Positions 662 to 38,548 of a stretch of DNA of 64,000 bases are shown in pieces. A model generated the notes under the pieces. It was given only the letters and a program-made list of their open reading frames with translations, was not told the DNA's origin and ran no database searches. Origin of the DNA: Lytechinus pictus (lineage: Eukaryota); NCBI RefSeq assembly GCF_037042905.1, contig NC_087245.1, forward strand, positions 4,216,001 through 4,280,000, written 5' to 3'. Position 1 is the first letter of the stretch, and every line of letters starts with the position of its first letter. A program made the translations under genes and the position numbers.

Positions 662-1469
662 TCAAGTAGAATTATCATGATTATCGATGTCCGATGACGA
701 TGTTGGTGATTCTGATGGCATATCGGTAGCATCAATATCGTTTTCCATATCAAACTCTGTTGGTGATTCTGGAGATGTACTGGTAGCATTGATATCGTCT
801 TCCATTTCAAAACCAGTGTTATCGTGGCTATTATCGATATCCTCCGAATTAGTATCATTCACTTCTTCAATCTTTTCTGAAACATCTTCAGTATCAACGT
901 TCACATCGTCGGATAATTCACTCTCTTTTGTCGATACATGATCGTCTTCTTTATTATGACTTTCGATCGTTGTTTCGTCAGGGGGGTCGTACGGAGGATC
1001 ATCCGGAGGATCAGTCGTAATTATCGAAACATCCTGTTCAAGATCAGTTGGAGATTGACTTAAGTTCCTTTCATTATCACTCTCCTCTTCTCTACTCGAT
1101 TCCCGACCCAACTTAATTGGCCCGTTAAATAATGATGTTTCAAATATTTCGTCCAATCCTATATCAAATCCTGGATTATCGAATCCTACGGACAGCGGGC
1201 GTTCATTGACGTCCTCGGCAATCGTCGGCAATTTCGAAGTTTCTGACGTGATTGTTTCATTTCGTAATCGTCCATATTGATTATTCTGAATGACTTCACT
1301 ATCATTAGTCCCAGCTATTAAGTCTGGTGTGGAGTAACCCATCTGCACGGGTGTGTATTCTGAAGCGTCTTTTTGTTTTTCTTGGTTGGTTATCGCTTCT
1401 TCCCAAGTAGATAGGACACGGAAAGTGGGAGCTTGATCTCCAATCGGATGTCTTTCGTGAAAACTATGA
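662..1469 (-). CDS. Receptor locus A, terminal exon: acidic, low-complexity cytoplasmic tail with Tyr motifs (SEYTPV, QYGRL)
   Basis: Open frame 662..1573. Polypyrimidine/AG acceptor at 1470-1471. Phase 2 matches the donor of the TM exon at 2137, the same arrangement as in loci B and C. Confidence 0.75.
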
Positions 1470-2136
1470 CTGAAATATAAAAAAAAAATATTGAGAAAAG
1501 GAGAAATAGAGAAGCGTAAGGGTCCTCTTCTGATTAAAAAATAATTTATTTTCATAACAAACATTATGCCCATTGCAAAATATAAGTTTTCTATAGATGT
1601 AGGAAAGAATCAACGCTTTAGACGATGTATTTTAGCTATCAAATTATCTTATTAAAATGTATCATTTTCATATTTTAAGGAGTTAATGATACGGACAAGA
1701 AGTTAAAAAAAAGAAGAAATTGTTAAATGCTGCCAAAGCATGCATTCCCATTATGAAGTTGACAAACTCTTTCTTAATTCTCTTTGAGGTTTGGATTGCA
1801 TATTTTTTTTCTTAAAGAAAACACTATTCAATCATATTGAGGGTAATCCCGTGGGGGTGGACGGGGGACGTGCCCCCCCTCGATTTTTGAATTTTGTACA
1901 GCAATATACGGGAGAGGGTCGACGGAACAAACATCTCACGAAATTGCCGCCTATGATTCAAATTGAAACAGAAGTCACTAAACCTCTAACATGCAAATTG
2001 TAAATTTTTTAACAGGTTTATGACTTCCCAAAAAGAAGTGGGATAGATTGAGCTTTAACATTCGGTACTTTATCGAGTGGACACTAACACACCTTACTAA
2101 CTTCCTCAATAAACCGTAACCATCAAATATGCTTAC

Positions 2137-2233
2137 CTTTGCTTCTTTCTTTTGAAATAGCACCAGAAGTATACAACAAGGCCCACAACAACAATAGCTA
2201 CAACAACCGCTACAACAGCTCCAATTATGGCAC
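2137..2233 (-). CDS. Receptor locus A, transmembrane exon (GAIIGAVVAVVVAIVVVGLVVYFWCYFKRKKQ)
   Basis: Hydrophobic helix followed by a basic stop-transfer cluster. TTTTAG acceptor and GTAAG donor. Phases 1/2 as in the TM exons of B and C. Confidence 0.8.
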
Positions 2234-3699
2234 CTAAAACAAAACCAAACATGTTCAAATAATTATACACAAATGTTGATAACCACATTACACTCAACAA
2301 CAAAATTGAAATAATATACCTTATCACAGTGGTATAAGTTCTATCAGAAAAAAAATATTGAAAATGTTAAAATGATATTCCTTTAATTGACACGATACTT
2401 GGTTTTTGGACGATAAATGTTTCATTTTTTATTTAAAAAGATGCTAAATGTCCCTAAGGCGAGGCACATTTTGAGTAGACTATCAAAGTCTATTATTCCT
2501 GCAGTAGATTTCAGATATGAGGAATTGGTAGGCAGGTAACTACGATATCCCCCTATAAAAAAAAAAGCTGATGGAAAATGTAAGCATTATTGAATTAGTA
2601 AATAATTTCGGTTTATTATGTAGTGTGTGAATACGACACTCAGAAAGTAAATTAAAGTATATTTGTGGCAAGTTCTTACACTAATGAGAAGAGATTGTAT
2701 AAATCATAATTTGTCATTTGATTTATTATTTGCTAATGGGTGAAAGTAGATATTTAATCTCATAAATCTTTCGTGAGAATAATGAGAATGAGGGGAGACA
2801 TCATATCAACGTAACAGATGGCGGTATAATATTCTCTCTGATAAGCAAACAAGATCTCGGAGTGAGAAAGGGGGGGGGTGAGAATTTGCTTAATTCAGAA
2901 GACATATACAGAGAGTGGGGGCAGAAAAGAACACAACAAAATAATCAGAGATACGTGTGAAAGTACGGAGACACTTCATAAAGGAATAACAAGAGTATGA
3001 GATGAGTTTTAAGTTTCATTTTGTGATGCCGCGTTCAAGCAGCTCCTGATTAACCTGCCATGTGATTTTTTTTAATGAAAGGCTATTTCCTCAGAAAATC
3101 AAAATAACTTTAAATATGTTTTTAAGACATTATCATGCAATGATTGCTTCTCTGGAAAATTGTCAGTCATCATAAACCATTAAGAAATTGGCATTTACAC
3201 TTTAAATCACAAGACATATCGGGAAAACTGCTATCAAGTAAAGACCAAAAAACAAACAAAGGGAATAATAAAAAATATAAGTTTTTCTTGACGCACAGTA
3301 CACTTTAAAAAGAAAAAAAAGACTGGAACTGAATTCAACCGATATCTTTCAAAATAGATGTGACATAACTCCTTTAAAAGTGACCCTACTCCTTTTAATC
3401 CACAAGATGGCGCACTTCTGCCACGGCACTTATGTTACCCGGGATGTTACCATGGTTGTAGAAGATGCCGTTGGCCAAGTTGTGCCTTATTTTTCGTCTG
3501 ACAAGGACATTACTAAAGAATCCGCACCATATTGAATGGACACGCACTATATGTGACTGATCCAGTTTATTGAACCAGTTTGCGTCTGTGAGAAAACTGG
3601 TTCTTTTTTGTTATCATGGCCACACTCTATTCCTAACTTCGGATTCGATATTTATTATTTCATTCCGAACAGTAAGGCAATCATAATGCAAACTACTTA

Positions 3700-4221
3700 G
3701 GGTGCGTTTATCCGCCACTTTTTTACCCTATAATCATGATTCCAATCATGATTCAAATCACGATTCTGCAGAATCACGATTGCGTTTAGTCGAAATTGAA
3801 TATAATCATGATTAGAATCACAAACATGAACTACGAAAAAAAGGGCGTTTGGAAAGACGTTTCTGCAGAATCACGTACGAAAATGTTCGGATAAACGATA
3901 TCGTGATTTGAATCATGATTATATGACGTCATTGTGTCGAGCTATTTCCGGTTCTTGCCAAGGCGCGCGCCCCACGTTGTCACATCACATGTACGTCGCC
4001 GACCTCCAATTAAGTGTCCAACGTTGACCTATACTTCCTGGGTCAAACTGCGCACTGTGATGCGCACTGGATCGGTCCGAATCCGAGGAGAAACAGCGTT
4101 GGAACGAAGGTCGTCTAAACCCTGATTCTGTAGTAATTGTGATTCATGTTTGTGATTTGAATCATGATTCCAATCATGATTCAAATCACGATTCTGGCTT
4201 GAGGTCGGATAAACGCAGCCC
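3700..4221. mobile_element. MITE, PIF/Harbinger-like, with internal AATCATGATT repeats
   Basis: TIR GGGTGCGTTTATCCG ... CGGATAAACGCAGCCC, flanked by TTA/TAG. Confidence 0.7.
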
Positions 4222-4254
4222 TAGTCTCCTCTGCTGCAACAAATTCTTTCTTAC

Positions 4255-4403
4255 CTGTGTTAACCGAAGATCCATCCATATTCGGCGGAGATGTCGTCAC
4301 AGCTGGTTGAGTTTGTGATTGGTTAGTTGACATCGATGACAGCCGATCGAGTCGTTAACATATATGATAATGAGTGGTAATCATCACACAATATTAAGGT
4401 GCC
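4255..4403 (-). pseudogene. Receptor locus A, stalk exon with an apparent +1 frameshift
   Basis: AG acceptor at 4404-4405 and GTAAG donor at 4250-4254. The 5' part reads in phase with the upstream exon but hits a stop. The 3' part (MSTNQSQTQPAVTTSPPNMDGSSVNT) is in phase with the TM exon. Length 149 where 148 is needed. Confidence 0.55.
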
Positions 4404-4446
4404 CTGAATAACAAAAAGAAATAGAAATAAGATGATGAAGTTATAA

Positions 4447-6226: not shown

Positions 6227-6334
6227 TTAAATATCTGTTTCATCAAGGCGCATGATAATGTATCCCTGGAAAGACAGGCTGTCTACCCCCCCCCCTTTAT
6301 TGTCTAAAAGCAGGATAACAATACACACCATTAC

Positions 6335-12047: not shown

Positions 12048-12065
12048 ATAATAATAATAATAATA

Positions 12066-12109
<44 letters not shown>

Positions 12110-17077: not shown

Positions 17078-17927
17078 CTATCCCACTATTTCTGAATCGT
17101 GGCGTGACAATGTACAGTTTTGCTCATTAGCTTCTGAACGTTTGTCAGATGGTTTTTCCGATCTAGCAGTTTTGTTGACTGTTGCATACTCGGGTATTGA
17201 AGAAATTGTATTTTCTTTGCTGACTTCATGACTTGTGTCATCAGGAGTTTCGATCAGGGTTGAACCAATCTCTATTTGTCGTGGAGAACTGGCAGGTTGA
17301 GGCTGGATATCGTGATATGTCGGGCAAGTGTCCGCAATAGGACTGCTTACTTCTGAGTAATGGCTACCGATGGGATCTGATTTTATTTCATAATAGTTTG
17401 GAGATAAAGAATCTGTTTGTAAGTTCAATTTATCTGTAGGGTTGTTAAGACTATTATCAGTCATATTTGAACGTTCTGGTTCATCGCAAAGCTTGTTATC
17501 GGTTGAGAAATAATTCTCGTGTTTATTCGATGTTAGATCAATCTTCATCTGTTGGGATTTAAGGGATGCATGTTGATCATGTGATGTTTCATCTTGGGAA
17601 TGTGATTCCATTTCGAAGACATCATAGTTGTTCATACTTGAGTCTCCTTCTCTCCATGATGGTTTGTAAAGGACATTGTCTATGAGTCCGTGCTGAGGGG
17701 TATCAATCGGCGATTCGAGCTCGTATTGATGTGGCTCCGATCGGACATCATCGGCCGATTCGTACAAAACCGTAACACCATTATCGAGATCACTGCTTTT
17801 AGGAGCAGAATTCTTTACAACTTCGTAGTAATTTGGATCTTCATTGATTAAAACGTTCTTCGTATTATGAACCAAGACATCTGATTTGGGTTTATAGCTT
17901 ATTGTGTCATCTTGCTTCATTGCAGAT
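17078..17927 (-). CDS. Receptor B terminal exon, cytoplasmic tail
   Basis: ORF 17078..17974 with acceptor at 17928-17929. Motifs YYEV, NVLYKP, YYEI, SHYSEV, YHDI, YATV. Confidence 0.88.
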
Positions 17928-20900: not shown

Positions 20901-23900
20901 AATGTCAAGAAATTGCAAAAACCATTCCAAGCACTTTCTAAATTTATTCAATTCATGGGTTAAAAGAAGTTTTGATTTTTTTTTCCAAACAAATAAATCT
21001 TTTATGTGAATGCTTACCATTGAATACAATATATGAATCCCTCTGTTTTCTTCCGCAAAACTGTTCTGGATTTCCGGTGCATTTTGTGTTACAGACACGC
21101 TCTTTGGATGAAATCGTGAAGTTGTTCAAGCAGTAACAGGTATCACCCCTTTGAGCAGCAAATGAGGCCGATAGATCCATACATATATCAAGACATTGTT
21201 CATTGGTTAATACTTGACTTGTCTCTGAAATATTGATGTGTGGCAATTCAGAAGAGCGAATCAGAAAGCAACCTAAATATCCAGGTTCTGCAGAAGATCG
21301 GATGGAAAACGGCATTGTTATATAAATTCGAAATTCGAAGATATAGTAATATGAGAACAAAATTGTCAATGTTGGTGGGTGCTTAATAGACAAACTTCAT
21401 AAAGCTGTTCGTAATAAGTTACGAACAACTACGAATGGCTAGTTCCCTTTCTTGAGGTAAATTATGCGCACAAACCTATTCAGTTGTGTTGATTTAGAAA
21501 GAAGGGATCACCAGTCGCTCGTAACTTACGAACAGCTTTATGAAACAAATACCAGTTAAATATGACTTAGAGTCACACTTAAATTCCCAGTTACGTGCGG
21601 TATATTAAAGAGTTAAGTATGACTTAGAGGCACACTTAAATTCCCAGTTGCGTGCGGTATATTAAAACACATCAACGTATTGGATTGCCAAGAGGACGAG
21701 CGCTGTATAATGCGTTCCTCCTGTCCTTTTCTTTCAAAATTTTGAATCTCTTGAGAAAAGAAATGGCAAATTTCATGTCAATGATAATCTTTAATTCATG
21801 TTTATAGAATATGGAATAAGTCAGTTACCAGTTACCTTTGTTCTAATGCACGACCATCTATGAGAATAGAATCACAATAATATTTAATGCTAAAATTCAA
21901 ACTTTGAAATTATACCTACTTTGGCACACAACGCCAGCTGCTTCAATTTCGCTACAGTTGCCCAAGCCATCTGAATCACAATCAGGAACTACTAAAAAAC
22001 AATATCACATTGAAAAAGTAAATCTGTAAAATGAATGTCTCGATGAATGAGATAACAACTAATATTCAAGTCAAGTTTTCATGATGATGAATGTTTTGTG
22101 TAACCAGATTCACTTGCAATAGTTGTATGATGTATTATAATTCAGGATGCTATTTGGATGAAAAGAACAAGACAATAATAGGTGATTTGTTGCATGGGGC
22201 TTATACGACCTGAACACAATTATCAAACTGACTGCTTCTTGGGCGTTGTGACGTTGTGAGCTGACTGACCTTGAAGTGAACATCATTATGGGCTTGGCCA
22301 CACTGCCCCAGTCCTCAGACGACAACGACACTATGGTTATTTCAAGAGCAATTTTGACATTCCCCGAAAATAGAGCCAATCAATATATGTGTCTTTTCAA
22401 ATATATTTATATATTTTTTCTAATTTCTTGCCTCAGTTTATATTTTCTGACCTTAGAGAATTCTAAAGTAAGTAATTTTACTAATTATGAATAAAATTCC
22501 TTACAGACCTTAAATTCTTATTAAGACTTGATATTTATGGAAATCAATAGACATTGTAATGGTGGCCACCGGGGTGGCCAGTTGGGCAACGTACCCTTCA
22601 CCCCCTCCCTTCCCGGTACGTATAGGGATCCCATCCAGACAGATGGAAAAGTGGTCCTGGACCATAATTACATATACTACTTTATATATATTTCAGTCAT
22701 AATGCGGGTCATACTCCCTTGTAAGCATGCATGGTAATAGCAAATGCCGTGGGCATTATCTATCTGATTCATACCCCGGTCCCCGGAGAAGAACATTTTC
22801 TATAGACATCTTTTATCCCTAATTGACAAAGAAAAATACTATTTAGATGTGTTACATCAGCAATATACGACGTTACCTAACGTCCTGTTGTCAATGCTGA
22901 ATATATCTGATTGTAGGCCTCTCCCAAATCTGTTATCATCAGGTAGAAATACTGCATGGCGATATTCAAGCTCTTCACATACCCAGTTAGCTTCATCGAT
23001 TGTCCACCTGTCATTAGATACTACAACACCTCTTAACTCTTCACCATCTTCGTCTATTACTGTCGCCTCCACACGGCCTTCGTTAGGCGAACCACCGTTG
23101 ACCAAGTGAACTACGTAGTGACAAATGAATCGAAAAGGGCTCATAAAACGCAATTTTGTATCAGAATGGAGCTTCGAATCAAAGTTTCGAAGTGACAATC
23201 ACAACGGACATTTCATATTTCTGTTTGTTTTAAACATGGACCTACTACAGTATACTCTAGGTCCATGTTTTAAACAAGGTAACAGCATGGGTAGTAAGGT
23301 ACTGTGAACATTTTTTTCGTTATCAATAATGTTTGATAATATGATCAAGGGAATGATGCTCTGAAGAATAATGGCTAGACATTTAATTACTTTGGAGTGA
23401 AATATTGTTCAATACCAATGCAATCATATCCTCTATTTGAATCAGAATATTTTGTTTTGTACCTTCTACTGATCAATGTAGGATCAATCATGTTATCAAG
23501 GAGGTCATTTCCTCTCACTATCGGACAAGGAAATAAAGACAATGTAAGGCTATAGCTTTCTCTATATTTCATGTATTTAGGGTCGAAGTATATAATTACA
23601 TCAACTCTGTTTAGAATTATTAGTGAATGCGTTGTGGAAAACATATTCTTGAATTATTATACCAGCTGGTAATTTAACATATAATTCATTATGATATAGT
23701 GTCCTATAAAAATAATATGAATCTTGAAATCTTAAAGGATGTTAAGATGATTGAGAAATAAGATTAAAGGGTTGAGACCAAAAATTTAGATTTCTGGCAA
23801 AATTGAAATGTCCAGAATTTTCGGAACGCAAGATTGTAATACAGAATTTTGCGCGCGTACCCAAAAATGTGAAATTTAGAATGTTTATATATATTTTCAT

Positions 23901-24287
23901 ATGCCAAGTTTAATGGTTTTATAATGCTTTCCCATGATCTTTAATAAATGTATTAGCATTGCATATTCCTTCATTATTAGGAGGGGAAATCGATCTGTTT
24001 GCTCCCCAATATTTCCAATAGCTAGCGATCGCCCCTTTCACTCCATGATCGACACAATTGTTCAAAAGACATCAATTAAATCATTGATTCTTTTTCTCTT
24101 CATCGCTTGAATATTTTGTGTTGTAGAAATTCATTCCATGCATTCCAAGACTATACCTCATATCAAAACTGATTTTAAGAAATAATGATCATAATTGATA
24201 CTTACATGATGAAAGGATATAGCAATCTGACCAGGCAAAATAACTTGATACCAGATACATCATTGACACGCAATATGATGACTTCAT
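17078..24287 (-). CDS. Receptor B: signal - SRCR - WSC - CCP/Sushi - mucin-like stalk - TM - Tyr-rich tail, ~642 aa
   Basis: Exons 24206-24287, 22877-23110, 21920-21991, 21018-21287, 20308-20490, 19675-19758, 19275-19334, 18488-18581, 17078-17927. All GT-AG and phase-consistent; total 1929 nt with no internal stop. SRCR motifs LVNGG..EGRVE, WT..EA.WVC..L.Y, FG.G, AGVVC. WSC motifs YLGCF, CLDIC, CYC, C..KC.G....CG. CCP motifs C-P..C..L.G...LQC...W....P.C. Confidence 0.88.
18488..18581 (-). CDS. Receptor B transmembrane exon
   Basis: VLVVAPAVTVVSIVVLMAACLAMYFIKNKRK; AG/GTAAG bounded. Confidence 0.85.
20308..20490 (-). CDS. Receptor B CCP/Sushi exon
   Basis: FCPEISDVNLNVYGRYRFGDIVRANCSGGKQLMGDDALQCVGGPDIFQWNGTIPAC; four Cys plus the conserved Trp. 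Confidence 0.9.
20775..20853 (-). pseudogene. Remnant of a second CCP exon (5' half) in the WSC-CCP intron of receptor B
   Basis: Colinear with the CCP exon. Reads FPKIPCVN*NN*GRY*FCDLVRANC against CPEISDVNLNVYGRYRFGDIVRANC. Shares TACAATTCGCCCTCACTA exactly. Confidence 0.8.
21018..21287 (-). CDS. Receptor B WSC domain exon
   Basis: PGYLGCF...CLDIC...FAAQRGDTCYC...CNTKCTGNPEQFCG...YIVF; 8-Cys WSC pattern. Confidence 0.9.
21395..21546. mobile_element. Small inverted-repeat element
   Basis: TTCATAAAGCTGTTCGTAA ... TTACGAACAGCTTTATGAA. Confidence 0.6.
21554..21666. repeat. Tandem duplication of ~57 bp
   Basis: GTTAA(A/G)TATGACTTAGAG.CACACTTAAATTCCCAGTT.CGTGCGGTATATTAAA occurs twice. Confidence 0.85.
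22877..23110 (-). CDS. Receptor B SRCR exon 1 (domain completed by exon 21920-21991)
   Basis: HLVNGGSPNEGRVE...WTIDEANWVCEELEY..A...FGRG. Confidence 0.9.
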
Positions 24288-28537: not shown

Positions 28538-29507
28538 TTATGACTTCTTCTGCACAGTGGCGTAGCGAGGAAAGGGTTTGTTCTTTTCAAAGGAAGAAGT
28601 AGCAACATATGTAGAAGGATTCTTTGATGCGAAGTCCCCATCGATATCAACATCGATGTATTCATGACTCGTTGATGTCGGGTCATCTGAGCGAACTACA
28701 AGTCGCTGACCACTACGATCTGAGGTCGTAAGCTCTGAAGCATCGTCGTCGATGCCGTGTACAGAGTCGTATCCAGTGAATTTGGTACGTGACGGAGTGG
28801 GTGCTGACTGAGGTTCGATGTCATGATACCTTGGTCCGTCCGTAACAATGTTCCCTGAAAATAGAGGATCTGCTCCTTCGTAATCGACAGGAGTAAATCC
28901 TGGTTTGATTTCATAGTATTTTCTTGAAGCAAAATCAGGTTGTCTTGTTTGGTTATCAGCAGGTTTGTAGAGTATGTTATCAATCATTTTTCCTTCTTGA
29001 TGAAAGCCTCGAGATGTTTCTCCGTCTGGGTATGCATACTCGGAATCATTCGGTGGAAGATCGTTGCCGTTCGGTGATTGCCGAAAGTTATCCGATGCAT
29101 GAATTTGTGTGTTTCCCGCGTTTTCGACTGGTTTGTAAAGAACATTGTCTATGAGTCCATAGCGAGGTGTGTCATTTGGTGAAGTCTGATTGTGTTTCTG
29201 TAGATTCGGATCTCTTCGGATATTATCGGCCGGTTTGTACAAAATATTGTCAATCAGTCCGTACTGAGATGGATTTTGCGATGAGCCCTTATCAGGTTGT
29301 TCATTCGTATCTCTTCGGACATCATCGGCTGGCTTGTACAGGACATTGTCTATGAGACCATCAGTACCTATAATTGTGTCTGGTGCAAGTGTATTTGGTT
29401 TAACTTCATAGTAACTTGGCCCATCGTTGTTGGGAATTTTGTGCATACTATAACTCTTGTTGTTGAACTCCGATTCTCGACGCGTCGGTTCTGGTTTCAT
29501 ATCAGAT
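28538..29507 (-). CDS. Receptor C terminal exon, cytoplasmic tail with four IDN(V/I)LYKP repeats
   Basis: ORF 28538..29542 with acceptor at 29508-29509. Ends RYATVQKKS. Confidence 0.9.
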
Positions 29508-32500
29508 CTACAGAAAATGAAAATCAGATAGGGACAAATCATTCTTTTTTTCAGATGATAGTCTTATTTAAATTACTTTCAAGGGATAAAAGACATGAAT
29601 AAATGATGTAGACCTGAATGGAAAATTAATACAAGCATTTGAAATTTGTGTAAAAATTATTCAGCAGGCAATGTAAACTAATTCATTTTGATATTTCCAG
29701 GAATAATACACTTTTTTTTTGGGGGGGCGAGGTGTTACAATACTTACTCTGTCTTTCTCATTCTGTTGAAGTAGAAGAATATGGATGTAGCAAGAACCGC
29801 TATAATCACCACACTGATAACAGACACAGTTATTGGAACTAGAATTAACAAGGGAAAAGAAACAAGTTATGGATACGCCTCAACCTTTCAAGATATGTTT
29901 ATTACTTTTTATTATTTTCATTTATTCGTGTTTTTCATACTGCATGACCATACTTCACAGTAAAGGCAACACTGTTTTGAACATGATTGTTTCTTCATCA
30001 ATCTAATAAGTTATTATATTGATATTTTGTTTTGATATCCTAGAACCAAATTTTCCATACTGATTAATTGGTTGGCTCATTGACTGGCAGGGAAGTGTAA
30101 TTATATCAAAAAGTTTCTATTAAGGTGTCATCTGTTACTGTAATAAATGACATTGATGCCTTCAATCGTATTCAATTAATAAAGATCAGTTTTTTCCATC
30201 AATAATTTTTATTTCCTAGTAAAACTCAATAATGAATAGCTATGTACTGTTAGCAAACCAACCATAATCAGGAGTCCGACTTAATATCACCTAATATCGT
30301 TCAACTTCTTTTCGAAAATTTGGGCAATCATCCAAAAATAAATAAGTAATCAATTTGGGTTTCCTTAGAAATTCCACAGTTTTATCCCCTCCCATACGTG
30401 ACAGTTTTTGGTGTAGATCAAATATTACACAATCATTCTCTTACCAGCTAAAGATTTGGAGTCCGATCTGGCTCCCATCCCCATACCGCTTACCGTTGAC
30501 ATGGTTGGTGAAATATCTATGTAATGGAAAAAAAGAGTTCTATTTATAATTTTTATTACAAAACAAACTAAAGTCGATTTTGGGAAGAGGGTTTTCATCG
30601 GCCGTACATGTCGATATTTAGATCGTGTTAACAAAGTTACCAGATTAGTTGACAATAGTTATAAAAGCACAACGGATATTAACATAATGCTGGTATTAAT
30701 GAAACAGGGAAGAGTAGTTTAAGAATTATTATTCATGAGAAGAAACGCAGGCCTTACATTTTGACATTTTTATGGCAATTTTTTTCTTTCTGTTGGGCGT
30801 TTTCACAGCATAAATACCAATGAGAGTGGCAGTGATGCCAATCAGAAGGGCATGGCACTGAATTCAAGCCTTGGGAATCCCATTCTCGATCAAAAGATAA
30901 AGGTTTATGCTTATATATTCATTTGATTAGATTGATTATTGATAATCACTGTCATCCTAATGAACCACGTCATCCTATTTTGATTTGTTACTAATCACAT
31001 ATTGTTTTACCTGTCATTATTTCACCTCCTGTACCTGTTGGTGTGAGTGTTGTACCCATTCCTATAGGCCGAGTTATTGGAGAAATGGTAACTATTGGTC
31101 CTACTGTGGAACCATCTGATGATAGATAAGAAATATTTTTCTGTTTTTATGCTCAGGCGCAGATCGGGGGAAATGGGGAACGTGCCCCTTTATTGAGGAT
31201 TCCTTGTTACGTTTTTTTTATATAACTAAAAAAAATTGCTTCCTGCTTGTGGTGATATGTTTTTTTCAATTGTATTTTTGTTCTGTATCCACCCCTGATC
31301 ATGCTTGAATGAAAACGATGTATCTGTTCCTTTTAAATATTCATCTAATTGGATTTAACCCTACATACTCGATTTCCATTCTACTTATACATTTACATCA
31401 CCCTTTTGTCATAATTTTATATCCCAACTCTAAAAGAAAATTTTATATACTTTACGCCTTATTACTTTGCTCTTCTTCTTTAAAAAAAAATCTGTATGAT
31501 CTTGATCCTTGTCTGAGCTAGTCATGTATCATGAAACATAAATCACATTTCTTCCAGTTTATTTTCAATAACATTTTTCAAAACTATTCGTTGCAAACAG
31601 GCACATCGTAAGCCTAAGGCTTAAGCAAAAAAAAAGAGAAAGACATGGGTTTCGTTCATGCGCCATATTCAAGATTTTAAGATAAACCTCATGCATGAAA
31701 ATTTCGTTAATTGAAAATTTTCAAAAGAAAAGGATGAATTTACTTCATACCTACACATGTCGGAATGGTACCATTCCATTGAAATACATCAGGTCCGCCA
31801 ACACATTGCAAGACAGCATCGCCCATCAGCTGTTTGCCACCACTACAATTCGCCCTCACTATGTCACCAAATCGGTACCTTCCATATACGTTCAGATTGA
31901 CGCCAGAGATCTCGGGGCAGAATCCTACATATACTGAGGAAATGAATATAATATATTTTTTTAAATAAATGAATAAACGCATTGACCGTACATTTACCAA
32001 ATTGTTATGCTCTGTAACGAAACACACGTGATGGCTACTAAAGGTTTATGACACGGGTTCAATGCGCTCGATCTTTAGAAATTCCACTATCAATAATTGT
32101 GATATCAATTTCAATTCAATTCAAATTCAATTTATTCTTGATAATAATAAAAACGTCATCAAATTGTACATTCGTATATATAGAAATATCATTACAAGAA
32201 AAGGAGGGCAACAAAAAGTTTACACTTGAAAATAAGAAGCCTCCAAAGAAATGACCATTCAAAAGAATGCACGCTTTATCATTTTTCAGAGATTCATTGC
32301 AATTTATTTTAAGAATAGGGGCAAATAATTTGGTAACACCTGGTCCTGTCATACATTATGAATGTATACCAACGATGAAGAAATAAGTTCGATAAACATG
32401 TTTGTATAAATTCTATACACGCAACTTAAAAACCTCCGGTCCTCTATCAAATTGAAATCAATAATAAAATATAAATCAAATCATGGTACATGTATATAGA

Positions 32501-35500
32501 GACATAACGTGGTTCTTACCATTAAAAACTGTAAACACATCTCGTCCCCTACCACATAGCTGTCTATCATTACCAGTGCATGGCCTGTTGCAACCCTCAT
32601 CTGCATCATTTAAAACGGAAGAGTCATTGAAGCAGAAACACATTTCGTCTCTCTGTGCAGCAAAGAGAGTTCCATCTCCCTGACATAGCAGCAGACATTC
32701 TTCGTTGGTTCTTTTTCCATTTTCTTCTATTATTTTGACACTATTCCGTTCGGGACCGGGAATTCGAAAACATTTGGGTTCTGTATATAAGATAAAAAAA
32801 TTAAAATGTCACCTAATCTTCAAAAGTTATATAATTCAACACTGTCCCTCAAAATGCAAATTAGTTGTTCCACATGGAAATATAAAAAAAATCATAGAAA
32901 TAATAACACAGACATAATAACTTATTCAGAAGTACTATGAATTTAGATTGAGTGATTTACTGCTATGAATACTTCATGTTGAAAGTTTGTCGATTTAGAT
33001 TTTTCGAACATAGTTTTTCAAATCATTCATACTCTCAAAATATGCCTGACCACTTGGTAAAGATTGTGATCATCATTATTTCCAAATATGTGTTAAAATG
33101 TTACAGAATTTGATTACTCTAATTTCAAAGCCATTATAGAAATATTATTTCGTCATCAAATTACTACAGAGAAAAAAATGCTTGATATTCGCTTATCTAT
33201 ATAACTTATTGAATCCAAAAACCATAGGTATCTGAGCGAGTGCGGCACTATACAGGAATAATGCTTATTTCACCTTTGTTGTCGCATTTGTTTGACTGTT
33301 CCATTAGAAATATACTTCGCTACCTGGGGCGGATCCAGGATTTTTCGAAAGGGGGACACATTTTCCCGAGAAAAAAAATTGACAAGCAAAAAAAAAAAAA
33401 AGAAAGGGGGTTTAACCCAAAATTTAGGGTGTTTCGTCCATGAAAAATTTTGACAAGCCCTCCCCCCCAAAAAAGGTCTTCACTTTCAAAAGGGGGGCAC
33501 ACTTCTGTTTAAACGACATTTTTACATTACAGATTTTTATTGTGCCTCTCAAAAGGGGGGAGGCGGGCCGGCTGTGCCCCCCTCCCATGGATCCGCCAGT
33601 GTTCGTTACTAACCATAATTTCCAACATAACATTGTTACATTGCTTGCCTAATCTGATTAATTACTTAACCATCTTGCATAAAAATGTTTCCGAATCATA
33701 ATACGAGTGGGGTGAAGCAATCGAAAAATAAGCGTTATTATTGAGGAAATTATATATACTTTCTGAGGGGTAGTCCTAAGAAGAAAAGGAGTTTTATCAA
33801 TATTTACCCAGGGGCGGATCCAGCTTTCGCCAAAAGGGGGGGGGGGTCGAATTATTTTCACCTATATTTCCCCCGGTCGGCCACTCAAAGTTGATGTCCT
33901 GAAAAATTGAATATTCTGGGCAACGTTTGAGATCCTGAACAAGATCATAAAGATGCGTATGTGGTTATATACTTACTGCGAATGCAAGCAGAAATTTTTA
34001 ATATACGTTCTGGTCTGATCGAAAAGGGACCTGTTAAGGTCTACCGTGAAGACGATGCATATTTCAACAATCAAATAATGCGAGCGCGAAGCGCGAGCTG
34101 AAAAGTTTTGACAATACAACCTAAAAATTGGACGTTCTAAGCACTTTTTACAATCATGAAAAGGATAGGTACGTAACTAAACAATGCGAGGGCGAAGCGC
34201 GAGTAGAAAAAAAGAAAGTTAGACCTAAAAGCGGGACACTCTATTCATGTTTTGTAAATCATGAAAAGAATGGGTAATTGGGAACCTTCCTAACATTAAT
34301 AATGCGAGCGTGAAGCGCAAGCAGAAATTTTTTGATATTCTGATCTGAAACGGGATAATCTAAGAATGCTTTGATAAAGAACATGCTTGCGCGTGTTTTA
34401 GATTTAGACATAGAGGGCCGGATTCTGAAGTCAGGTTTAAAGGTATTGTTTAACTTTGTGAGGAGCCGATTAAAAAAATTCTCAAACCAAGATGAAACAT
34501 GTGTACAAGTGCATGTATTAGAACTAATAAACCCTGAAAACAACTATTATTGAGAATGAAAAGCTAAAACTACAAGGCAAACCCCGATTTTGTAAATAGG
34601 CGTCTTATAGACGCCTAAATAGTACACATAAGTGTATGGGATGAAATTAAGATGGTGTTTTCGGTCACTTTATATTTCAATTTTTGAAGCACTAAATAAT
34701 TATTTTCGAACGCAATTTTTTCTGGGCTTCTTTTTTGTAACATATCACAGACACAGGTGACAAGTGTGACCTTCTAGCTCAGATTTTTTTAAAGTCAAAC
34801 CAATGTTAACCAATCACTTTAACTTAGACCATGGTCTAACTCTGTGCTAAAGTTATGGGGAGCCAAAAATTCAAAAATTGTGTGCTATTGTATATTTCTT
34901 ATGTTAAATATTTTGCTTTCATAATGAAGAAAAATACATCAAAATACTTAAGTCATCATTCCCAGACAAATATGAACAATTTGGGTGTCATATGAGTTAA
35001 TAAATTTGATGTGTTCTGTTACTAAGGATTCGTGCCCCATTTGGCTCTTAACATGCTGAAGCACTAATTCAAGCACTGTTTGTGAAAATTGTGAAGTGGA
35101 TATGGATCGAACTTAATAAATGATGCGAGCGCAAAGCGTGAACTGATATTTTCTTTATTATTATTTTGACCTAGGGCTGGGAGTCTGGGACTGTCATATG
35201 AAACATGATGAATATCTTCCTATTCTTCTTCCCATAAGCGCGACATAAAACTTGCCGATATTCCCTTCTGAAAAAAGGGACAATTTAATTATTAGGAATT
35301 CATTAAAATGTTATTATCTTGTTTATTGATATAATACATTATGAGAGCCCGAAAACTGATGATATTGAGTCCTGGAAACTAGACATTTTAAGCACTTTTG
35401 TAATAAATAGGACGCATGGGTTAATATCGCGATCCGAAATTTTTGATAAACTGTCATGAAAAGGGAATTTTAAGTAGTTTCTTATAAATTTATATACTAC

Positions 35501-38500
35501 TCACCAATGAAAATTCGAGTGCGCAGCGTTAGCTGAAAGGTTTTGATAATCAACCATGAAAAGGGATATTTTGAGAACTATTATGGAATACACGAACATA
35601 GCAGGTAATTGACAAATCAATAATGCGAGCGCGCAGCGCGAGCTGTAAATGTTGATATATCAATAACACGGACATTTTACAGAGCACTTTTTGAAAATCA
35701 ATTTGTAAATCAAATAAACTAATGAAAGCTCGATGTCCGAGCTGAAATATGTTTTGTATATTGACTTCAAAACTTAATATAAGCTTCATATTAGCCTATT
35801 TATTGAGCAAGATAATCTCATCGAACATGCAATGCGAAAATTTTATATAGTGACACGATATTTTTTATTGTCCAAGTCTTCCCCTCGCCTTACTCCTCTT
35901 TTTTCCCTCTTCTTACTTTTCCTTTTTTTTCTTCCTTTCCCCTTTTTCATTTTTTGACTAAGCCATTAGGGGGCCCCCCTGGATCCCCCTATGTTTACCA
36001 TCATCCGGGCCATCATCTTACTTTTCTTACTTACTATTACATGTAACACCTGCGGTCTGTACGTTCACCTGGCTGCAGTCAGCAACAGATTCTCCGCTTT
36101 CGTCATCACTGTCTCCCTCATATACACAAACCAGTGTAACTGTACACAACAACCACAATAAAAAGTGAATGTAAGTTGTTTTTTTCCAAATGTAAATAGA
36201 GTACCGAAGTATGACGTCATATGATTTTTAATTTTTTGCATATCCGCATTTCTTTATACCACATTTCGGTGGAGCAATACACCCAAAATCAAAATTGGGT
36301 GGGAATCGGTCAATGGGGGCCCAATTAAGATATGACCTCATGAATATAAAATAGCCCAATTGAAATAATTGTTTATTGGCCTGAGTCTAAATTTGTGAAC
36401 TATGTCGGCCAATATACATTGATTTCAATATTATTAACCATCTAGGTGGATGAAGAGTCTCCACTTCACCCCCCCCCCCTCCATCTGTTCTACAATTCAT
36501 GATAGGCCGGCCGTTTTAGGTCACAATAGCCAAGTAGTCATGATCTTCTCCGATTAAATGTTTTCTCAAAATAATCAGCATAATTACCATTGTTTGGGAT
36601 ATCTTCAATTCCGAAAACTTTCGAGTGTTGCCCCCTGCCAAATCTCGAATGACCAGGGGCAAAAATAGCATTGGGAAAGCCTACAATCTGACAAACCCGA
36701 TCTGCTGTGTCAATTGTCCAGCCAATGTCCGATAAGACTCCATATTCATCCTCCTCATCAATATTGACCTTGACTTCAATACGTCCTTCATGAGTAGAGC
36801 TCCCATCCACAAGGGCAACTGATAGTAGAAGAAAATAGATAAATGACCTTAACATCACACAAAAATTTAACTACGTACACTCTAAAAATATTGGGTGCTC
36901 CATGAGGGTACTTTATGTGTCCAACCAACATTGGGTTGGACATCTTTTGGGCATTTTTATTTATCCAGTGTGATGAAAATTTTGCCCATATTGCTGCATA
37001 TTTTCTAACCTTACTGGACAACATGCTTCCCGCATTGGATAAAATACTGACCAAATTGGTTGGACACATAATTACCCTCGTGGTGGTAAAAAATTTACCC
37101 AATCAATATTTGCAAGATTTTTTTTACAGTGTATACATTTAGCCCAGCTATGCAATAGTTAGGTCCATAGCACAACCTCTATCCGCTGCTGGAGGTCACA
37201 TTGAACAGTTGAAGGAGGGCGACACTGCATGGGACACTGCATTATGTGCGGAAACCACAAAATGTCATCTCCGGGAAGTGTAGTGGGCAAATAAGTTTTG
37301 TGATGACCATATACATAGGGATTTGTCAGAATGTATGTGGTAGAGTGTCAGATCGAACGTCGGATTGCACGCTTTAAAAACAATTTAGTAAAGGGCTAGC
37401 AGGGTGCAATTGTTATCTCAGTATGTTTCACTATTATTCTAGTCATGTTTGTACTATAATACAATCTTTCGATCCTGACGAGAATAGCGCGCGCCCATCC
37501 ATCTTGTTAGGTGTTCAAGACGCTCCTATTACACCAGCTTTAATTATGTTGCTCACAGCTATTTGATGAATTATCAACCCTTTACACATCATTCACCTCA
37601 CCTGGGTTGAGTGCAGCACATTGTGGATCAATATACATGTAGTAAAATGTATGAATCTAGAAGTTGCACCCAGCTTACTACTGATCGAGTCAACTTGATT
37701 GATTTGTTTTTAGAGAGTTTGTTTTTACCGGCAGTTTCGTATTCATGATCATCACATTTTAGTAAATCTTTGGTCACGTTGGTAGGCTATATTCAGCAAT
37801 GATGTTCTTATATAATTCTGTGTATCTGAAACATTTTCAATATCGAATTTTTTTCTCAATATATATATATACATATATATATATATCACAGAACTAAAAA
37901 AGGTTTATAGGTCATACATAAAAACTAAGAATACACTCAAAAGGGATGTGAAACAATAAACCTCTTCACAATATTGTTACCAATTTACGTTTGACTAATG
38001 GCCACGTTTTTTTTTAAATAATAATAATAGTTGGATTTATAAAGCGCTTTTTGCCAGAGGATACAAAGCGCTGCTATTATTACCCCGGCTTTAGCTCGAG
38101 CTACCATCACCGGCGCTCAGTGCATGCAAGGAATTACTCCTGCCGGGTATATCTCATACAGGGATATCTCATACAGGGAACTCATATCAGTATCTTTTAT
38201 TCATGCACCAATCTACAGCACTGCTTTACAAGGAAATACATCAGAGTAAATGAATTACGTAATAAGAGAGACAACGAGGAAGAACTTCAATTTCATCGTG
38301 CATTTGCGTCAACTCGGTGCAGAACCCCCACCCCCCGAAATTATTTCGACCCTGTTAAAAAAGAAAATGACTTGAAAAGGTGAATTAGCAGTTTGAATTA
38401 TTTGTTTTGTGCAGTATTCCACTACTAAATCTCTGACTAAAATGAAAAAGGTTCATTTATACTTACAACCTGAAATATAGTATCCGTCTGAAGAAAGCCA

Positions 38501-38548
38501 TAAATTCGTTTCCAAAATCATTACAAACAATAAACAAAATGATTTCAT
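28538..38548 (-). CDS. Receptor C: signal - SRCR - WSC - CCP/Sushi - mucin-like stalk - TM - Tyr-rich tail, ~699 aa; paralog of B
   Basis: Exons 38467-38548, 36588-36818, 36035-36139, 32520-32780, 31751-31933, 31011-31115, 30445-30516, 29748-29838, 28538-29507. GT-AG and phase-consistent; total 2100 nt. Same exon count and phases as B; the first exon is 82 nt in both and starts MKS. Confidence 0.88.
29748..29838 (-). CDS. Receptor C transmembrane exon
   Basis: VPITVSVISVVIIAVLATSIFFYFNRMRKT; AG/GTAAG bounded. Confidence 0.85.
31751..31933 (-). CDS. Receptor C CCP/Sushi exon
   Basis: FCPEISGVNLNVYGRYRFGDIVRANCSGGKQLMGDAVLQCVGGPDVFQWNGTIPTC. Confidence 0.9.
32520..32780 (-). CDS. Receptor C WSC domain exon (missed by the ORF track)
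   Basis: Hand translation: PKCFRIPGPERNSVKIIEENGKRTNEECLLLCQGDGTLFAAQRDEMCFCFNDSSVLNDADEGCNRPCTGNDRQLCGRGRDVFTVFN. Confidence 0.9.
33324..33601. mobile_element. hAT-like MITE
   Basis: Ends CTGGGGCGGATCCA / TGGATCCGCCAGTG. 8-bp TSD TTCGCTAC/TTCGTTAC. Confidence 0.75.
33809..35991. mobile_element. ~2.2-kb hAT-like non-autonomous element with GCGAGCGCGAAGCGCGAGC subrepeats and nested insertions
   Basis: Ends CAGGGGCGGATCCAG / CTGGATCCCCCTA. 8-bp TSD TATTTACC/TGTTTACC. Confidence 0.75.
34441..34818. mobile_element. TTAA-flanked MITE nested in the 33809 element
   Basis: TTAA|AGGTATTGTTTAAC ... GTTAACCAATCACT|TTAA. Confidence 0.6.
36588..36818 (-). CDS. Receptor C SRCR exon 1 (domain completed by exon 36035-36139)
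   Basis: ALVDGSSTHEGRIEV...WTIDTADRVCQIVGF..A...FGRG. Confidence 0.9.
36878..37131. mobile_element. CACT-terminated MITE, copy 2
   Basis: CACTCTAAAAATATTGGG ... TTTTTACAGTG with a TA TSD. Body matches 27376-27639. Confidence 0.85.

What the first reader, a model, noticed from the sequence alone, without database searches (positions are those of the whole stretch)
662..38548. Tandem cluster of SRCR-WSC-CCP receptors with long tyrosine-motif tails: candidate undescribed innate-immune signalling receptor family
Seen: two complete paralogs (B, C) with the same 9-exon layout (signal, split SRCR, WSC, CCP, two stalk exons, TM, ~280-320-aa tail), plus a third related locus, all head-to-tail on the minus strand. 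Established: SRCR, WSC (carbohydrate/glucan-binding in several proteins) and CCP modules are typical of pattern-recognition proteins, and most SRCR scavenger receptors have short tails. Inference: these are recognition receptors that signal through phosphotyrosine docking sites without a kinase, TIR or death domain. The distal domains are diverging quickly, as in diversified immune receptor clusters. I do not recognise a named family with this exact architecture, but I cannot search.
Basis: partly seen in the sequence, partly recalled or inferred. Interest (0 to 1): 0.85.

Follow-up and report, generated by a model that had tools for sequence, protein, structure and literature searches.

The report
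Sea-urchin SRCR-WSC-CCP receptor gene pair
Two neighbouring sea-urchin genes really do encode membrane receptors with an SRCR-WSC-CCP outside and a long tyrosine-motif tail inside, but they are a conserved, already annotated (uncharacterised) two-gene pair rather than a diversifying immune cluster, and an immune role is untested.

Summary
Genes B (window 24287-17078) and C (38548-28538), both on the minus strand, each have nine exons: signal, split SRCR, WSC, CCP, two stalk exons, TM and a tail of about 280-320 aa. Spliced RNA contigs confirm seven of B's eight introns. My models equal RefSeq Lytechinus pictus LOC129278720 (642 aa) and LOC129256018 (699 aa), both named "uncharacterized protein".

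- The pair is not an expanding cluster. This 812-Mb genome holds only these two copies of the tail.
- One-to-one orthologs with the same exons and the same neighbouring gene exist in L. variegatus and S. purpuratus. The S. purpuratus ones are listed in a 2024 SRCR census.
- Selection is mostly purifying (omega 0.13-0.32 against S. purpuratus). Only C's SRCR and WSC exons run near 0.9 within Lytechinus.
- Locus A is an intact, unrelated-looking 327-aa acidic membrane protein gene.
- The tails have no Pfam domain, ITAM or NPxY. They keep tyrosine islands: four (L/M)IDN(V/I)LYKP repeats in C, one in B, plus YYEI/V, YHDIxPQ and YATV.

Best reading: non-enzymatic adaptor-docking or endocytic receptors that work like CD5/CD6. 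Immune function is untested. The scan noted similar WSC-receptor families elsewhere in this genome (s1-313789, s1-324873).

The parts
24206..24287 (-). Gene B exon 1: ATG at 24287, signal peptide, phase-1 donor. The 5'UTR runs beyond 24340.
   Evidence: Joint 23110|24206 in RNA contigs of X1 and X13; sequence read; model.
22877..23110 (-). Gene B exon 2: first part of SRCR (78 codons).
   Evidence: Pfam SRCR 2.3e-6; joints 21991|22877 and 23110|24206. RefSeq isoforms X3 and X4 skip this exon.
21920..21991 (-). Gene B exon 3: end of SRCR (..CDSDGLGNC..AAGVVC).
   Evidence: Joints 21287|21920 and 21991|22877.
21018..21287 (-). Gene B exon 4: WSC domain with 8 Cys.
   Evidence: Pfam WSC 1e-12, 48.5 bits; KREMEN1 WSC 1.3e-8; joints.
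20308..20490 (-). Gene B exon 5: CCP/Sushi, 4 Cys plus Trp.
   Evidence: Pfam Sushi 18.9 bits, below the cut-off; DAF and CR1 matches; joints 19758|20308 and 20490|21018.
19675..19758 (-). Gene B exon 6: stalk 1.
   Evidence: Joints 19334|19675 and 19758|20308.
19275..19334 (-). Gene B exon 7: stalk 2.
   Evidence: Joints 18581|19275 and 19334|19675.
18488..18581 (-). Gene B exon 8: transmembrane helix plus KNKRKQ, phase-2 donor.
   Evidence: Joint 18581|19275; donor CA|GTAAGT read; AF2 helix 333-363 in a low-confidence model.
17078..17927 (-). Gene B exon 9: 283-aa cytoplasmic tail and stop codon. Motifs: YYEV, VLYESADDVR, GLIDNVLYKP, YYEIK, YHDIQPQP, PEYATV.
   Evidence: Open frame; model equals RefSeq P0027; motifs.
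38467..38548 (-). Gene C exon 1: ATG at 38548, signal peptide.
   Evidence: Homologous to B exon 1; sequence; model equals RefSeq P0016.
36588..36818 (-). Gene C exon 2: first part of SRCR.
   Evidence: Pfam SRCR 6.4e-7; CD163 matches.
36035..36139 (-). Gene C exon 3: end of SRCR (..AGVTC).
32520..32780 (-). Gene C exon 4: WSC, 8 Cys.
   Evidence: tblastx to B's WSC exon. The L. variegatus ortholog scores WSC 27.2 bits, just under the 27.8 cut-off.
31751..31933 (-). Gene C exon 5: CCP/Sushi, 92% nt identical to B exon 5.
   Evidence: Pfam Sushi 21.9 bits.
31011..31115 (-). Gene C exon 6: stalk 1.
   Evidence: The only phase 1-1 open candidates found by the splice scan; confirmed by identity of the model to RefSeq.
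30445..30516 (-). Gene C exon 7: stalk 2.
29748..29838 (-). Gene C exon 8: transmembrane helix plus NRMRKTE.
28538..29507 (-). Gene C exon 9: 323-aa tail and stop codon. Motifs: three GLIDN(V/I)LYKP plus one MIDNILYKP, YYEV, YYEIK, YHDIEPQ, HEYIDV, and PRYATVQKKS at the C-terminus.
   Evidence: Open frame; 0.73-1.00 of its words held by 8 RNA-like runs from 2 studies; motif conservation.
20775..20853 (-). Degenerate CCP exon remnant with in-frame stops, in the WSC-CCP intron of B.
   Evidence: blastn 76.6% to C's CCP exon; tblastx shows stops; depth is zero in all four runs in the bin that holds nearly all of it (20750-20949).
662..4333 (-). Locus A: a separate 3-exon gene (4333-4255, 2233-2137, 1469-662). 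It encodes 327 aa: a 26-aa N-terminus, a TM helix and an acidic tail. It is not demonstrably a family member.
   Evidence: Model; 91.7% identical to L. variegatus 'acidic repeat-containing protein-like' P0032, which lies about 15 kb downstream of the B ortholog. No similarity to B or C.

Best explanation
B and C are an old tandem pair of type I membrane glycoprotein genes of the SRCR superfamily. So far they are seen only in camarodont sea urchins (Lytechinus and strongylocentrotids).

Shown: each is transcribed and spliced from nine exons. The product is a signal peptide, one 4-cysteine SRCR domain, one 8-cysteine WSC domain, one CCP domain, a short Ser/Thr/Pro stalk, one TM helix, and a 280-320-aa tail that matches no Pfam family and got no secondary structure in a low-confidence AlphaFold model.

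Inferred: the ectodomain binds an extracellular ligand, probably a glycan or polyanion. The tail has no enzyme or death-fold domain and works through short linear tyrosine motifs. These are four (C) or one (B) Phi-x-N-x-x-Y units ((L/M)IDN(V/I)LYKP) of the type read by PTB-domain adaptors such as Shc, Dab, Numb and GULP, plus YxxPhi sites (YYEV, YYEI, YHDI, YATV) that could serve SH2 domains after phosphorylation or AP-2 without it. Ligand engagement would therefore recruit cytosolic adaptors for signalling, internalisation, or both, as CD5/CD6 and CED-1/LRP-type receptors do.

Whether the setting is immune, developmental or adhesive is not known.
For: Gene structure and expression: seven spliced junctions; exon-only depth; first mates on + in stranded runs, so the RNA is on the minus strand; C tail in RNA-like runs; identity to RefSeq models.

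Domains.

Conservation:
- The same nine exons occur in L. variegatus and S. purpuratus orthologs.
- The TM2-DnaJ gene, C and B keep the same order.
- Omega against S. purpuratus is 0.13-0.26 for the ectodomains and 0.32 for the C tail.

Tail:
- No Pfam domain, and no secondary structure in a low-confidence AF2 model.
- 17 of 19 Tyr in the L. pictus C tail are kept in S. purpuratus, against 63% of other residues (p=0.015).
- The C tail (pN 0.168) is better kept than its SRCR and WSC exons (0.23).
- All four IDNxLYKP units, YYEIK, Y(H/Y)D(I/F)EPQ and PRYATVQKK are kept in S. purpuratus.
- The LIDN(V/I)LYKP coding pattern occurs only in these two genes in 812 Mb, with zero control hits.

Analogy: CD6 is an SRCR-ectodomain receptor with a long non-enzymatic tail that docks GADS and SLP-76 on phosphotyrosines (PMC5440646, PMC6305463). 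PTB recognition of Phi-x-N-P/x-x-Y is established knowledge.
Against: - No phosphorylation, binding, ligand or cell-type data exist.
- The motifs are short. Position -2 is V or I, not the canonical Pro of NPxY.
- There is no ITAM and no canonical ITIM conserved in all orthologs.
- B's tail is loosely constrained: omega 0.54-0.76, the S. purpuratus B model lacks several motifs, and L. pictus B has lost the Tyr of its fourth unit (MTDNSLN).
- The signal peptide is weakly hydrophobic and was not tested with a predictor.
- The AF2 model was too poor (pLDDT 29) to support any structural statement.
Confidence: 0.6

Rival explanations
1. They are pure endocytic or phagocytic cargo (scavenger) receptors. 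The Phi-x-N-x-x-Y units act as FxNPxY-like internalisation signals read without phosphorylation by Dab2, ARH, Numb or GULP. The YxxPhi sites are AP-2 sorting signals. The proteins clear ligands rather than signal.
For: The motif types are exactly those of LDLR/LRP/CED-1-class endocytic tails (established knowledge), and they occur here 4+ times. The ectodomain is of scavenger-receptor type. No ITAM is present and no ITIM is conserved in all orthologs.
Against: No uptake data exist. Canonical NPxY is absent. Nineteen tyrosines, mostly conserved, in acidic contexts (YYEV, EYATV, HEYIDVD) look more like kinase substrates. This rival overlaps the main explanation rather than excluding it.
Confidence: 0.3
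2. They are non-immune receptors or adhesion molecules, for development, epithelium or nervous tissue. A conserved two-gene pair under purifying selection would serve a housekeeping cell-cell or matrix-recognition role, as KREMEN (a WSC protein) does in Wnt co-receptor endocytosis.
For: One-to-one orthologs, conserved synteny and no copy-number expansion. Omega is well below 1 over the longer comparison. KREMEN1 is the best solved match to the WSC domain. Transcripts are present at low depth in several general RNA data sets of the species.
Against: Tissue and cell type of the runs are unknown. Sea-urchin SRCR genes as a class are associated with immunity in the literature (PMC10855680). C's SRCR and WSC exons show raised omega (about 0.9) within Lytechinus.
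Confidence: 0.3
3. One reading: a rapidly diversifying tandem cluster of innate-immune pattern-recognition receptors that signal through phosphotyrosine docking.
For: The architecture is as described. Tyr motifs are conserved. C's distal domains have a higher N:S ratio than its tail within Lytechinus (p=0.005). An exon-limited gene conversion and a dead CCP exon show some local dynamism.
Against: Only two members exist in the genome. Orthology is stable across three species. No omega exceeds 1 for any domain exon. The only value above 1 is a 35-codon stalk exon of C (4.17 within Lytechinus, 0.63 against S. purpuratus). B's ectodomain has omega 0.13. There is no evidence on immune expression.
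Confidence: 0.1
4. Locus A is a degenerate third family member that lost its ectodomain exons and now acts as a short-ectodomain transmembrane adaptor.
For: It lies on the same strand about 13 kb downstream of B. Its TM exon enters in phase 1 and leaves in phase 2, as in B and C. The junction YFKRKKQ|S resembles B's YFIKNKRKQ|S. The gene is intact and conserved in L. variegatus at the same relative position.
Against: No detectable sequence similarity to B or C: the best blastp E-value is 0.11, in the TM segment only, and tblastx and tblastn find nothing. The tail is acidic and lacks the B/C motifs. Phase 1 to 2 TM exons and basic stop-transfer stretches are common.
Confidence: 0.15

Closest known systems
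RefSeq L. pictus LOC129278720 and LOC129256018. Orthologs: L. variegatus LOC121428426/LOC121428595 and LOC121428412/LOC121428590; S. purpuratus LOC754555 and LOC105445040.
   Same: Identical proteins (B = XP_063964116.1, 642 aa; C = XP_054750307.2, 699 aa). Orthologs share the 9 exons, the domain order, the tail motifs and the flanking TM2-DnaJ gene.
   Different: Nothing differs: these are the same genes. All are named 'uncharacterized protein'. The S. purpuratus ones appear only as entries Spu008 and Spu055 in an SRCR census (PMC10855680 supplement).
CD5/CD6 (vertebrate group B SRCR lymphocyte receptors)
   Same: Type I membrane proteins with an SRCR ectodomain and a long tail that has no enzyme activity. 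In CD6 the tail docks adaptors on phosphotyrosines (PMC5440646, PMC6305463). This is the closest 'works like' model.
   Different: CD5 and CD6 have three 8-Cys SRCR domains and no WSC or CCP. Their tails are unrelated in sequence. Here there is a single 4-Cys SRCR. No homology exists beyond the SRCR fold.
S. purpuratus LOC100891625 (P0035), and the SRCR-WSC-mucin-TM and WSC-CCP-TM genes of sea urchins
   Same: The same ectodomain order, SRCR-WSC-CCP-stalk-TM. WSC-CCP-TM exon series occur at other loci of this genome. 36 of the S. purpuratus SRCR genes carry WSC (PMC10855680).
   Different: 29% identity over 39% of the length. It has a canonical multi-Cys SRCR, a roughly 190-aa Thr-rich mucin stalk and a short 70-aa tail without IDNxLYKP units (only a faint YEPQP resemblance).
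KREMEN1/2 (Kringle-WSC-CUB-TM)
   Same: It is the best solved match to the WSC domain (E 1.3e-8). It is a single-pass receptor that drives endocytosis of a partner.
   Different: The flanking domains differ (Kringle and CUB rather than SRCR and CCP), and the tail is unrelated.
CED-1/Draper/MEGF10 and LDLR/LRP-family engulfment and endocytic receptors
   Same: Their tails act through NPxY-type PTB-docking motifs plus YxxL/Phi motifs, without a catalytic domain (established knowledge).
   Different: Their ectodomains are EGF/EMI or LDL-A, and their motif is canonical NPxY. Here position -2 is V or I, and the unit is repeated four times in a conserved 10-residue block.

Membership tests
SRCR superfamily (SRCR-SF) | At least one SRCR domain recognised by the family profile | tested here: met
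   Pfam PF00530 scores 28.3 and 30.1 bits on the exon-2 ORFs against a 26.1 cut-off. On the L. variegatus B ortholog it scores 32.5 bits and covers profile positions 2-100 of 100. PDB matches to CD163, DMBT1, SCARA5 and MSR1.
SRCR superfamily (SRCR-SF) | Canonical group A (6 Cys) or group B (8 Cys) cysteine pattern | tested here: not met
   Both SRCR domains have only 4 Cys (B: WVC, PDC, GNC, VVC; C: RVC, LVC, ADC, VTC), read from the models. The Cys of the 'GTVCDD' position and its usual partner both look missing, by my reading against the consensus recalled from memory.
WSC domain proteins | WSC profile match and 8 conserved cysteines | tested here: met
   B scores 48.5 bits against 27.8. 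The L. variegatus C ortholog scores 27.2 and 25.9 bits, just under the cut-off. C's exon aligns to B's WSC and keeps all 8 Cys. KREMEN1 WSC match 1.3e-8.
CCP/Sushi module | Four Cys, a conserved Trp and a profile match | tested here: met
   The sequence is CPE..C..C..W..C in both genes. Pfam scores 21.9 bits (C, above 20.7) and 18.9 bits (B, below). DAF, CR1 and factor H matches.
ITAM-bearing immune receptors | YxxL/I-x(6-12)-YxxL/I in the tail | tested here: not met
   A regex scan of six ortholog tails found none.
ITIM/ITSM inhibitory receptors | (S/I/V/L)xYxx(I/V/L) or TxYxx(V/I), conserved across orthologs | tested here: not met
   Matches are sporadic and none is kept in every ortholog: VLYKPV in all three C tails, SHYSEV/IHYSDV in L. 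pictus and S. purpuratus B but not L. variegatus B (RHYSEV). The conserved (P/H)EYAxV and PRYATV sites have P or H at position -2.
NPxY/PTB-docking receptors | Canonical NPxY | tested here: not met
   Zero NPxY in any tail. The relaxed Phi-x-N-x-x-Y form is present four times in C (plus an FNNKSY match) and once in B, and is conserved in S. purpuratus.
NPxY/PTB-docking receptors | Physical binding of a PTB domain to the motif | not testable with these tools
   No sea-urchin PTB domain could be supplied to the complex predictor, so no job was sent.
Diversified innate immune receptor cluster (for example sea-urchin SRCR arrays, Sp185/333) | Multi-copy lineage-specific expansion with turnover | tested here: not met
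   Two copies only in the genome. One-to-one orthologs and synteny across three species. The second L. variegatus block is colinear at about 94% including introns, so it is a haplotig or a recent block duplication.
Diversified innate immune receptor cluster | Positive selection (omega > 1) on recognition domains | tested here: not met
   NG86 omega for the ectodomains is 0.13 (B) and 0.26 (C) against S. purpuratus. The highest domain value is about 0.9 for C's SRCR and WSC exons within Lytechinus. Site models were not run because there are too few species.
Diversified innate immune receptor cluster | Expression in immune cells, induced by challenge | not testable with these tools
   Run metadata are coded and carry no tissue. 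No paper mentions the genes.
CD5/CD6 family | Three group B SRCR domains and homologous tail motifs | tested here: not met
   There is one 4-Cys SRCR plus WSC and CCP. The tail profile finds only echinoid proteins among 1.84 billion representatives.

The most novel reading that the evidence does not exclude
The repeated, genome-unique (L/M)IDN(V/I)LYKP unit defines a previously unrecognised echinoid adaptor-docking module. C would be a multivalent scaffold (four PTB sites plus SH2 sites) with a fast-evolving glycan-sensing ectodomain. B would be its partner, with a conserved ectodomain and a reduced tail. Together they would form a lineage-specific microbial-sensing or engulfment receptor pair in sea-urchin immune cells.
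Probability: 0.12. Interest if true: 0.6.

Novelty: new variant of a known kind. Interest (0 to 1): 0.35.

Why it matters
Sea urchins carry hundreds of SRCR genes, and almost none has a known ligand, signalling route or cell type. This pair is small, conserved across about three sampled species, cleanly modelled and expressed. Its tail is among the better-conserved parts of the protein (clearly so in C) and has an unusual four-fold Phi-x-N-x-x-Y unit found nowhere else in the genome.

That makes it a tractable entry point for asking how an invertebrate SRCR/WSC receptor couples to the cytoplasm. L. pictus is a genetically tractable urchin.

The pair also gives a clean example of exon-limited concerted evolution. 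The CCP exon is homogenised between the paralogs independently in two genera, while every other exon follows orthology.

It does not reveal a new class of immune system. The genes are already annotated, and their S. purpuratus orthologs are already counted in a published census.

Tried and rejected
1. AlphaFold2 on the 7-sequence family alignment gave mean pLDDT 29 and pTM 0.21. The model is unusable, so no fold search was run.
2. Tail-profile HMM search of 1.84 billion representatives returned only five hits, all echinoid. A word-indexed search with the full-length ortholog and then with the family profile added only S. purpuratus LOC100891625 and a weak Branchiostoma WSC hit. No sea-star, sea-cucumber or vertebrate relative was seen, but absence at this sensitivity is not proof.
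3. Literature searches for all LOC, XP and UniProt ids and for the SRR runs found nothing.
4. The SRCR census supplement lists the S. purpuratus orthologs only in an id table. No architecture or expression row is held as text.
5. Logan contigs carrying tail ORFs from a strongylocentrotid relative (L028-L031) have intron-like sequence upstream, so they give no splicing evidence.
6. A search for lost ectodomain exons near locus A by tblastn found nothing.
8. No complex-prediction job was sent, because no sea-urchin PTB or SH2 partner sequence was available by reference.
9. Rejected: pseudogenes or a gene-prediction artefact (intact frames, canonical splice sites, spliced RNA, conserved orthologs).
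10. Rejected: a signal peptide lying inside C's exon 2 (MLRSFIYFLLLSVA). The upstream exon 1 is homologous to B's RNA-confirmed exon 1 and completes the RefSeq model.

Full report
**What the window is.** The sequence is AT-rich (34-42% GC) and holds short exons in long introns. The proteins it encodes are identical to RefSeq proteins of Lytechinus pictus. The window lies at 4.216-4.280 Mb of a 44.3-Mb contig in an 812-Mb assembly.

**Checking the observation.**
- Pfam on the raw exon ORFs finds SRCR (2.3e-6 and 6.4e-7, both above the gathering score), WSC (1e-12) and Sushi/CCP (2e-3 and 2.3e-4). The long terminal ORFs match nothing.
- tblastx shows that B (about 17.1-24.3 kb) and C (about 28.5-38.5 kb) are paralogous exon by exon.
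- I read the splice sites on the minus strand. I then laid public reads and contigs on 18350-24340.
- Two contig sets (X1, X13) and raw RNA reads gave seven CT..AC joints (GT..AG on the minus strand) at exactly the predicted boundaries. Depth was confined to exons apart from three intronic repeats. In the stranded raw reads, exonic first mates lie on the + strand, as expected for an RNA made from the minus strand.
- Assembling the exons gives an open 642-aa protein for B. With two stalk exons found by a phase-aware splice scan, C gives a 699-aa protein.
- Both proteins are letter-for-letter equal to RefSeq XP_063964116.1 and XP_054750307.2.
- C's tail exon is held at 0.73-1.00 of its words by eight runs from the same two RNA-like studies.

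Exons 1 to 7 all end in phase 1. The TM exon ends in phase 2.

**The third locus.** Locus A is a real gene with three exons (4333-4255, 2233-2137, 1469-662). It encodes 327 aa: a 26-residue N-terminus, a TM helix and a very acidic tail. It is 91.7% identical to L. variegatus "acidic repeat-containing protein-like", which lies at the same relative position downstream of the B ortholog. It shares with B and C only the strand, the phases of the TM exon and a YF-basic-Q|S junction. blastp, tblastx and tblastn find no similarity and no leftover ectodomain exons. I do not count it as a family member.

**How big and how old the family is.**
- In the whole 812-Mb genome the C tail matches only itself and B. 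A degenerate DNA pattern for LIDN(V/I)LYKP hits only these two genes, with no control hits.
- The WSC and SRCR exons have no other close relative. The next best hits are 33-47% identical and lie elsewhere.
- A tail profile run against 1.84 billion representative proteins returns five hits, all echinoid.
- Full-length searches add L. variegatus and S. purpuratus orthologs, one distant S. purpuratus SRCR-WSC-CCP-mucin-TM protein and a weak Branchiostoma WSC protein.
- In both other species the order TM2-DnaJ gene (opposite strand), then C, then B, is the same as here (the TM2 ORF lies at 49536-50228 on the + strand).
- All four orthologs have the same nine exons.
- L. variegatus has a second colinear block 0.8 Mb away that is about 94% identical including introns. 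It is a retained haplotype or a recent block duplication.

The B/C duplication therefore predates the Lytechinus-Strongylocentrotus split, and the pair has been stable since.

**Rates of change.** Nei-Gojobori estimates are.

| Comparison | Region | B | C |
|---|---|---|---|
| L. pictus vs S. purpuratus | ectodomain (SRCR+WSC+CCP) | 0.13 | 0.26 |
| L. pictus vs S. purpuratus | tail | 0.54 (partial) | 0.32 |
| L. pictus vs L. variegatus | SRCR and WSC | about 0.4-0.5 | about 0.9 |
| L. pictus vs L. variegatus | tail | 0.76 | 0.25 |

- Within Lytechinus, C's SRCR and WSC exons have N:S differences of 37:11 against 20:22 in its tail (Fisher p=0.005).
- In B the contrast is reversed over the long comparison (p=5e-7).
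- "Distal domains diverging quickly" is thus true only for C and only recently, and it stays below omega = 1. The large B-C distance simply reflects age (dS is saturated).

**The CCP exon.** This exon is the exception. It is 92% identical between B and C here and 89% between the two S. purpuratus genes, but only 81-84% between genera. All other exons group by orthology, at 54-58% between paralogs. That pattern indicates repeated exon-limited gene conversion in both lineages. A degenerate CCP copy with stop codons lies in B's WSC-CCP intron.

**The protein.**
- The SRCR domain spans the whole profile (positions 2-100 of 100 in the L. variegatus B ortholog) but has four cysteines instead of six or eight.
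- The WSC domain has all eight cysteines. The CCP domain has four cysteines and the Trp.
- Solved relatives are CD163, DMBT1 and SCARA5 (SRCR), KREMEN1 (WSC), and DAF and CR1 (CCP).
- The tails have no Pfam domain. They are 5-6% Tyr and 16-18% acidic.
- An AF2 attempt on the shallow alignment failed (pLDDT 29). It showed only the TM helix and no secondary structure in the tail.

**Tail motifs.** An alignment of eleven tails shows conserved islands:
- P(S/N)YYE(V);
- three GLIDN(V/I)LYKPA-x-(V/I)RR units plus (M/L)IDN(I/V)LYKPADNQ in C (B keeps one full unit and degenerate ones);
- (K/N)YYEIK;
- Y(H/Y/C)D(I/F)xPQ;
- (P/H)EYAxV;
- in C, a C-terminal KPFP(R/S)YATVQKK.

Seventeen of nineteen tyrosines of L. 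pictus C are kept in S. purpuratus, against 63% of other residues (p=0.015). There is no ITAM, no NPxY and no ITIM conserved in all orthologs.

**Mechanism.**
- Shown: B and C are expressed, conserved type I membrane proteins with an SRCR-WSC-CCP ectodomain and a domain-free tail whose tyrosine-centred motifs are under constraint.
- Inferred: the IDNxLY units fit the Phi(-5)-x-N(-3)-x-x-Y(0) pattern read by PTB domains. The YxxPhi sites could serve SH2 domains after phosphorylation or AP-2 without it. The receptors would then recruit adaptors for signalling, uptake or both.
- The closest working analogue among SRCR proteins is CD6, whose long non-catalytic tail docks GADS and SLP-76 on phosphotyrosines (PMC5440646, PMC6305463). 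The motif type also recalls CED-1 and LRP-class engulfment and endocytic receptors (established knowledge).
- Which of signalling or endocytosis dominates, and whether the setting is immune, cannot be decided here. Run metadata carry no tissue, and no paper mentions these genes.

**Comparison with what is known.**
- The genes are members of the loosely defined SRCR superfamily. The S. purpuratus orthologs are entries Spu008 and Spu055 of a 2024 census, which also reports that 36 S. purpuratus SRCR genes carry WSC and 38 carry Sushi (PMC10855680).
- The same ectodomain order occurs in S. purpuratus LOC100891625, which has a mucin stalk and a short tail.
- WSC-CCP-TM exon series occur at other loci of this genome. 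This fits two earlier notes of this scan on WSC-receptor families elsewhere in the genome.
- What is particular to B and C is the 4-Cys SRCR, the compact stalk and, above all, the long tail with its unique repeated unit.

**Verdict.** I rate it a new variant of a known kind and of modest interest.

Noticed in passing
window 20308-20490 and 31751-31933: The CCP exon evolves in concert. It is 92-97% nt identical among all four Lytechinus B and C copies and 89% between the two S. purpuratus genes, but 81-84% between genera. Every other exon groups by orthology at 54-58% between paralogs. This indicates repeated exon-limited gene conversion in two lineages.
   Followed up: yes
window 20775-20853: A degenerate CCP exon copy with in-frame stops lies in B's WSC-CCP intron. 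Depth is zero in all four runs in the bin that holds nearly all of it (20750-20949).
   Followed up: partly
window 662-4333: Locus A is an intact 3-exon gene for a 327-aa short-ectodomain membrane protein with a very acidic tail containing DNPGFD. It is conserved at 91.7% and syntenic in L. variegatus, where it is annotated 'acidic repeat-containing protein-like'.
   Followed up: yes
window 49536-50800 (+ strand): ORFs of a TM2-domain plus DnaJ gene lie divergent from gene C. The same neighbour sits next to the C ortholog in L. variegatus and S. purpuratus.
   Followed up: partly
window 18750-19149, 20550-20749, 21350-21549: Three intronic stretches of gene B have summed contig depths of about 760 to 10,000 per bin in the contig runs, on both strands in the raw reads, with many loose ends and an opposite-strand joint at 21546/21547. 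They are probably dispersed, transcribed repeats or transposon fragments.
   Followed up: no
window 1-440: A tandem repeat whose minus-strand translation reads (PPQSPHPSHFFLIIxDxT)n, a minisatellite at the window's edge.
   Followed up: no
window 61095-62357 (- strand): A 420-aa open frame rich in Glu and Lys matches no Pfam family. It is probably a large exon of an unrelated gene.
   Followed up: no
L025 and L044 (L. variegatus CM031015.1, 91.10 and 91.90 Mb): The whole DnaJ-C-B block occurs twice, 0.8 Mb apart, colinear and about 94% identical including introns. It is an uncollapsed haplotype or a recent segmental duplication. L. pictus has one block.
   Followed up: partly
window 22877-23110: RefSeq isoforms X3 and X4 of gene B skip this in-frame phase 1-1 exon, removing most of the SRCR domain. 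Isoform X2 differs by one Val at the exon 2/3 junction, from an alternative acceptor 3 nt away.
   Followed up: partly
genes B and C as wholes: The paralogs show complementary constraint. B keeps its ectodomain (omega 0.13) and lets its tail drift (0.54-0.76, with motifs lost). C keeps its tail (0.25-0.32) while its SRCR and WSC exons run near 0.9 within Lytechinus.
   Followed up: yes
L038 (G000:C17:20.994 Mb), L039 (G000:C1:36.955 Mb), L040 (G000:C17:29.707 Mb): Other loci of the genome carry WSC exons followed by CCP exons, and in L038 and L039 also a TM-like exon. WSC-CCP-TM is therefore a recurrent echinoid ectodomain plan.
   Followed up: partly
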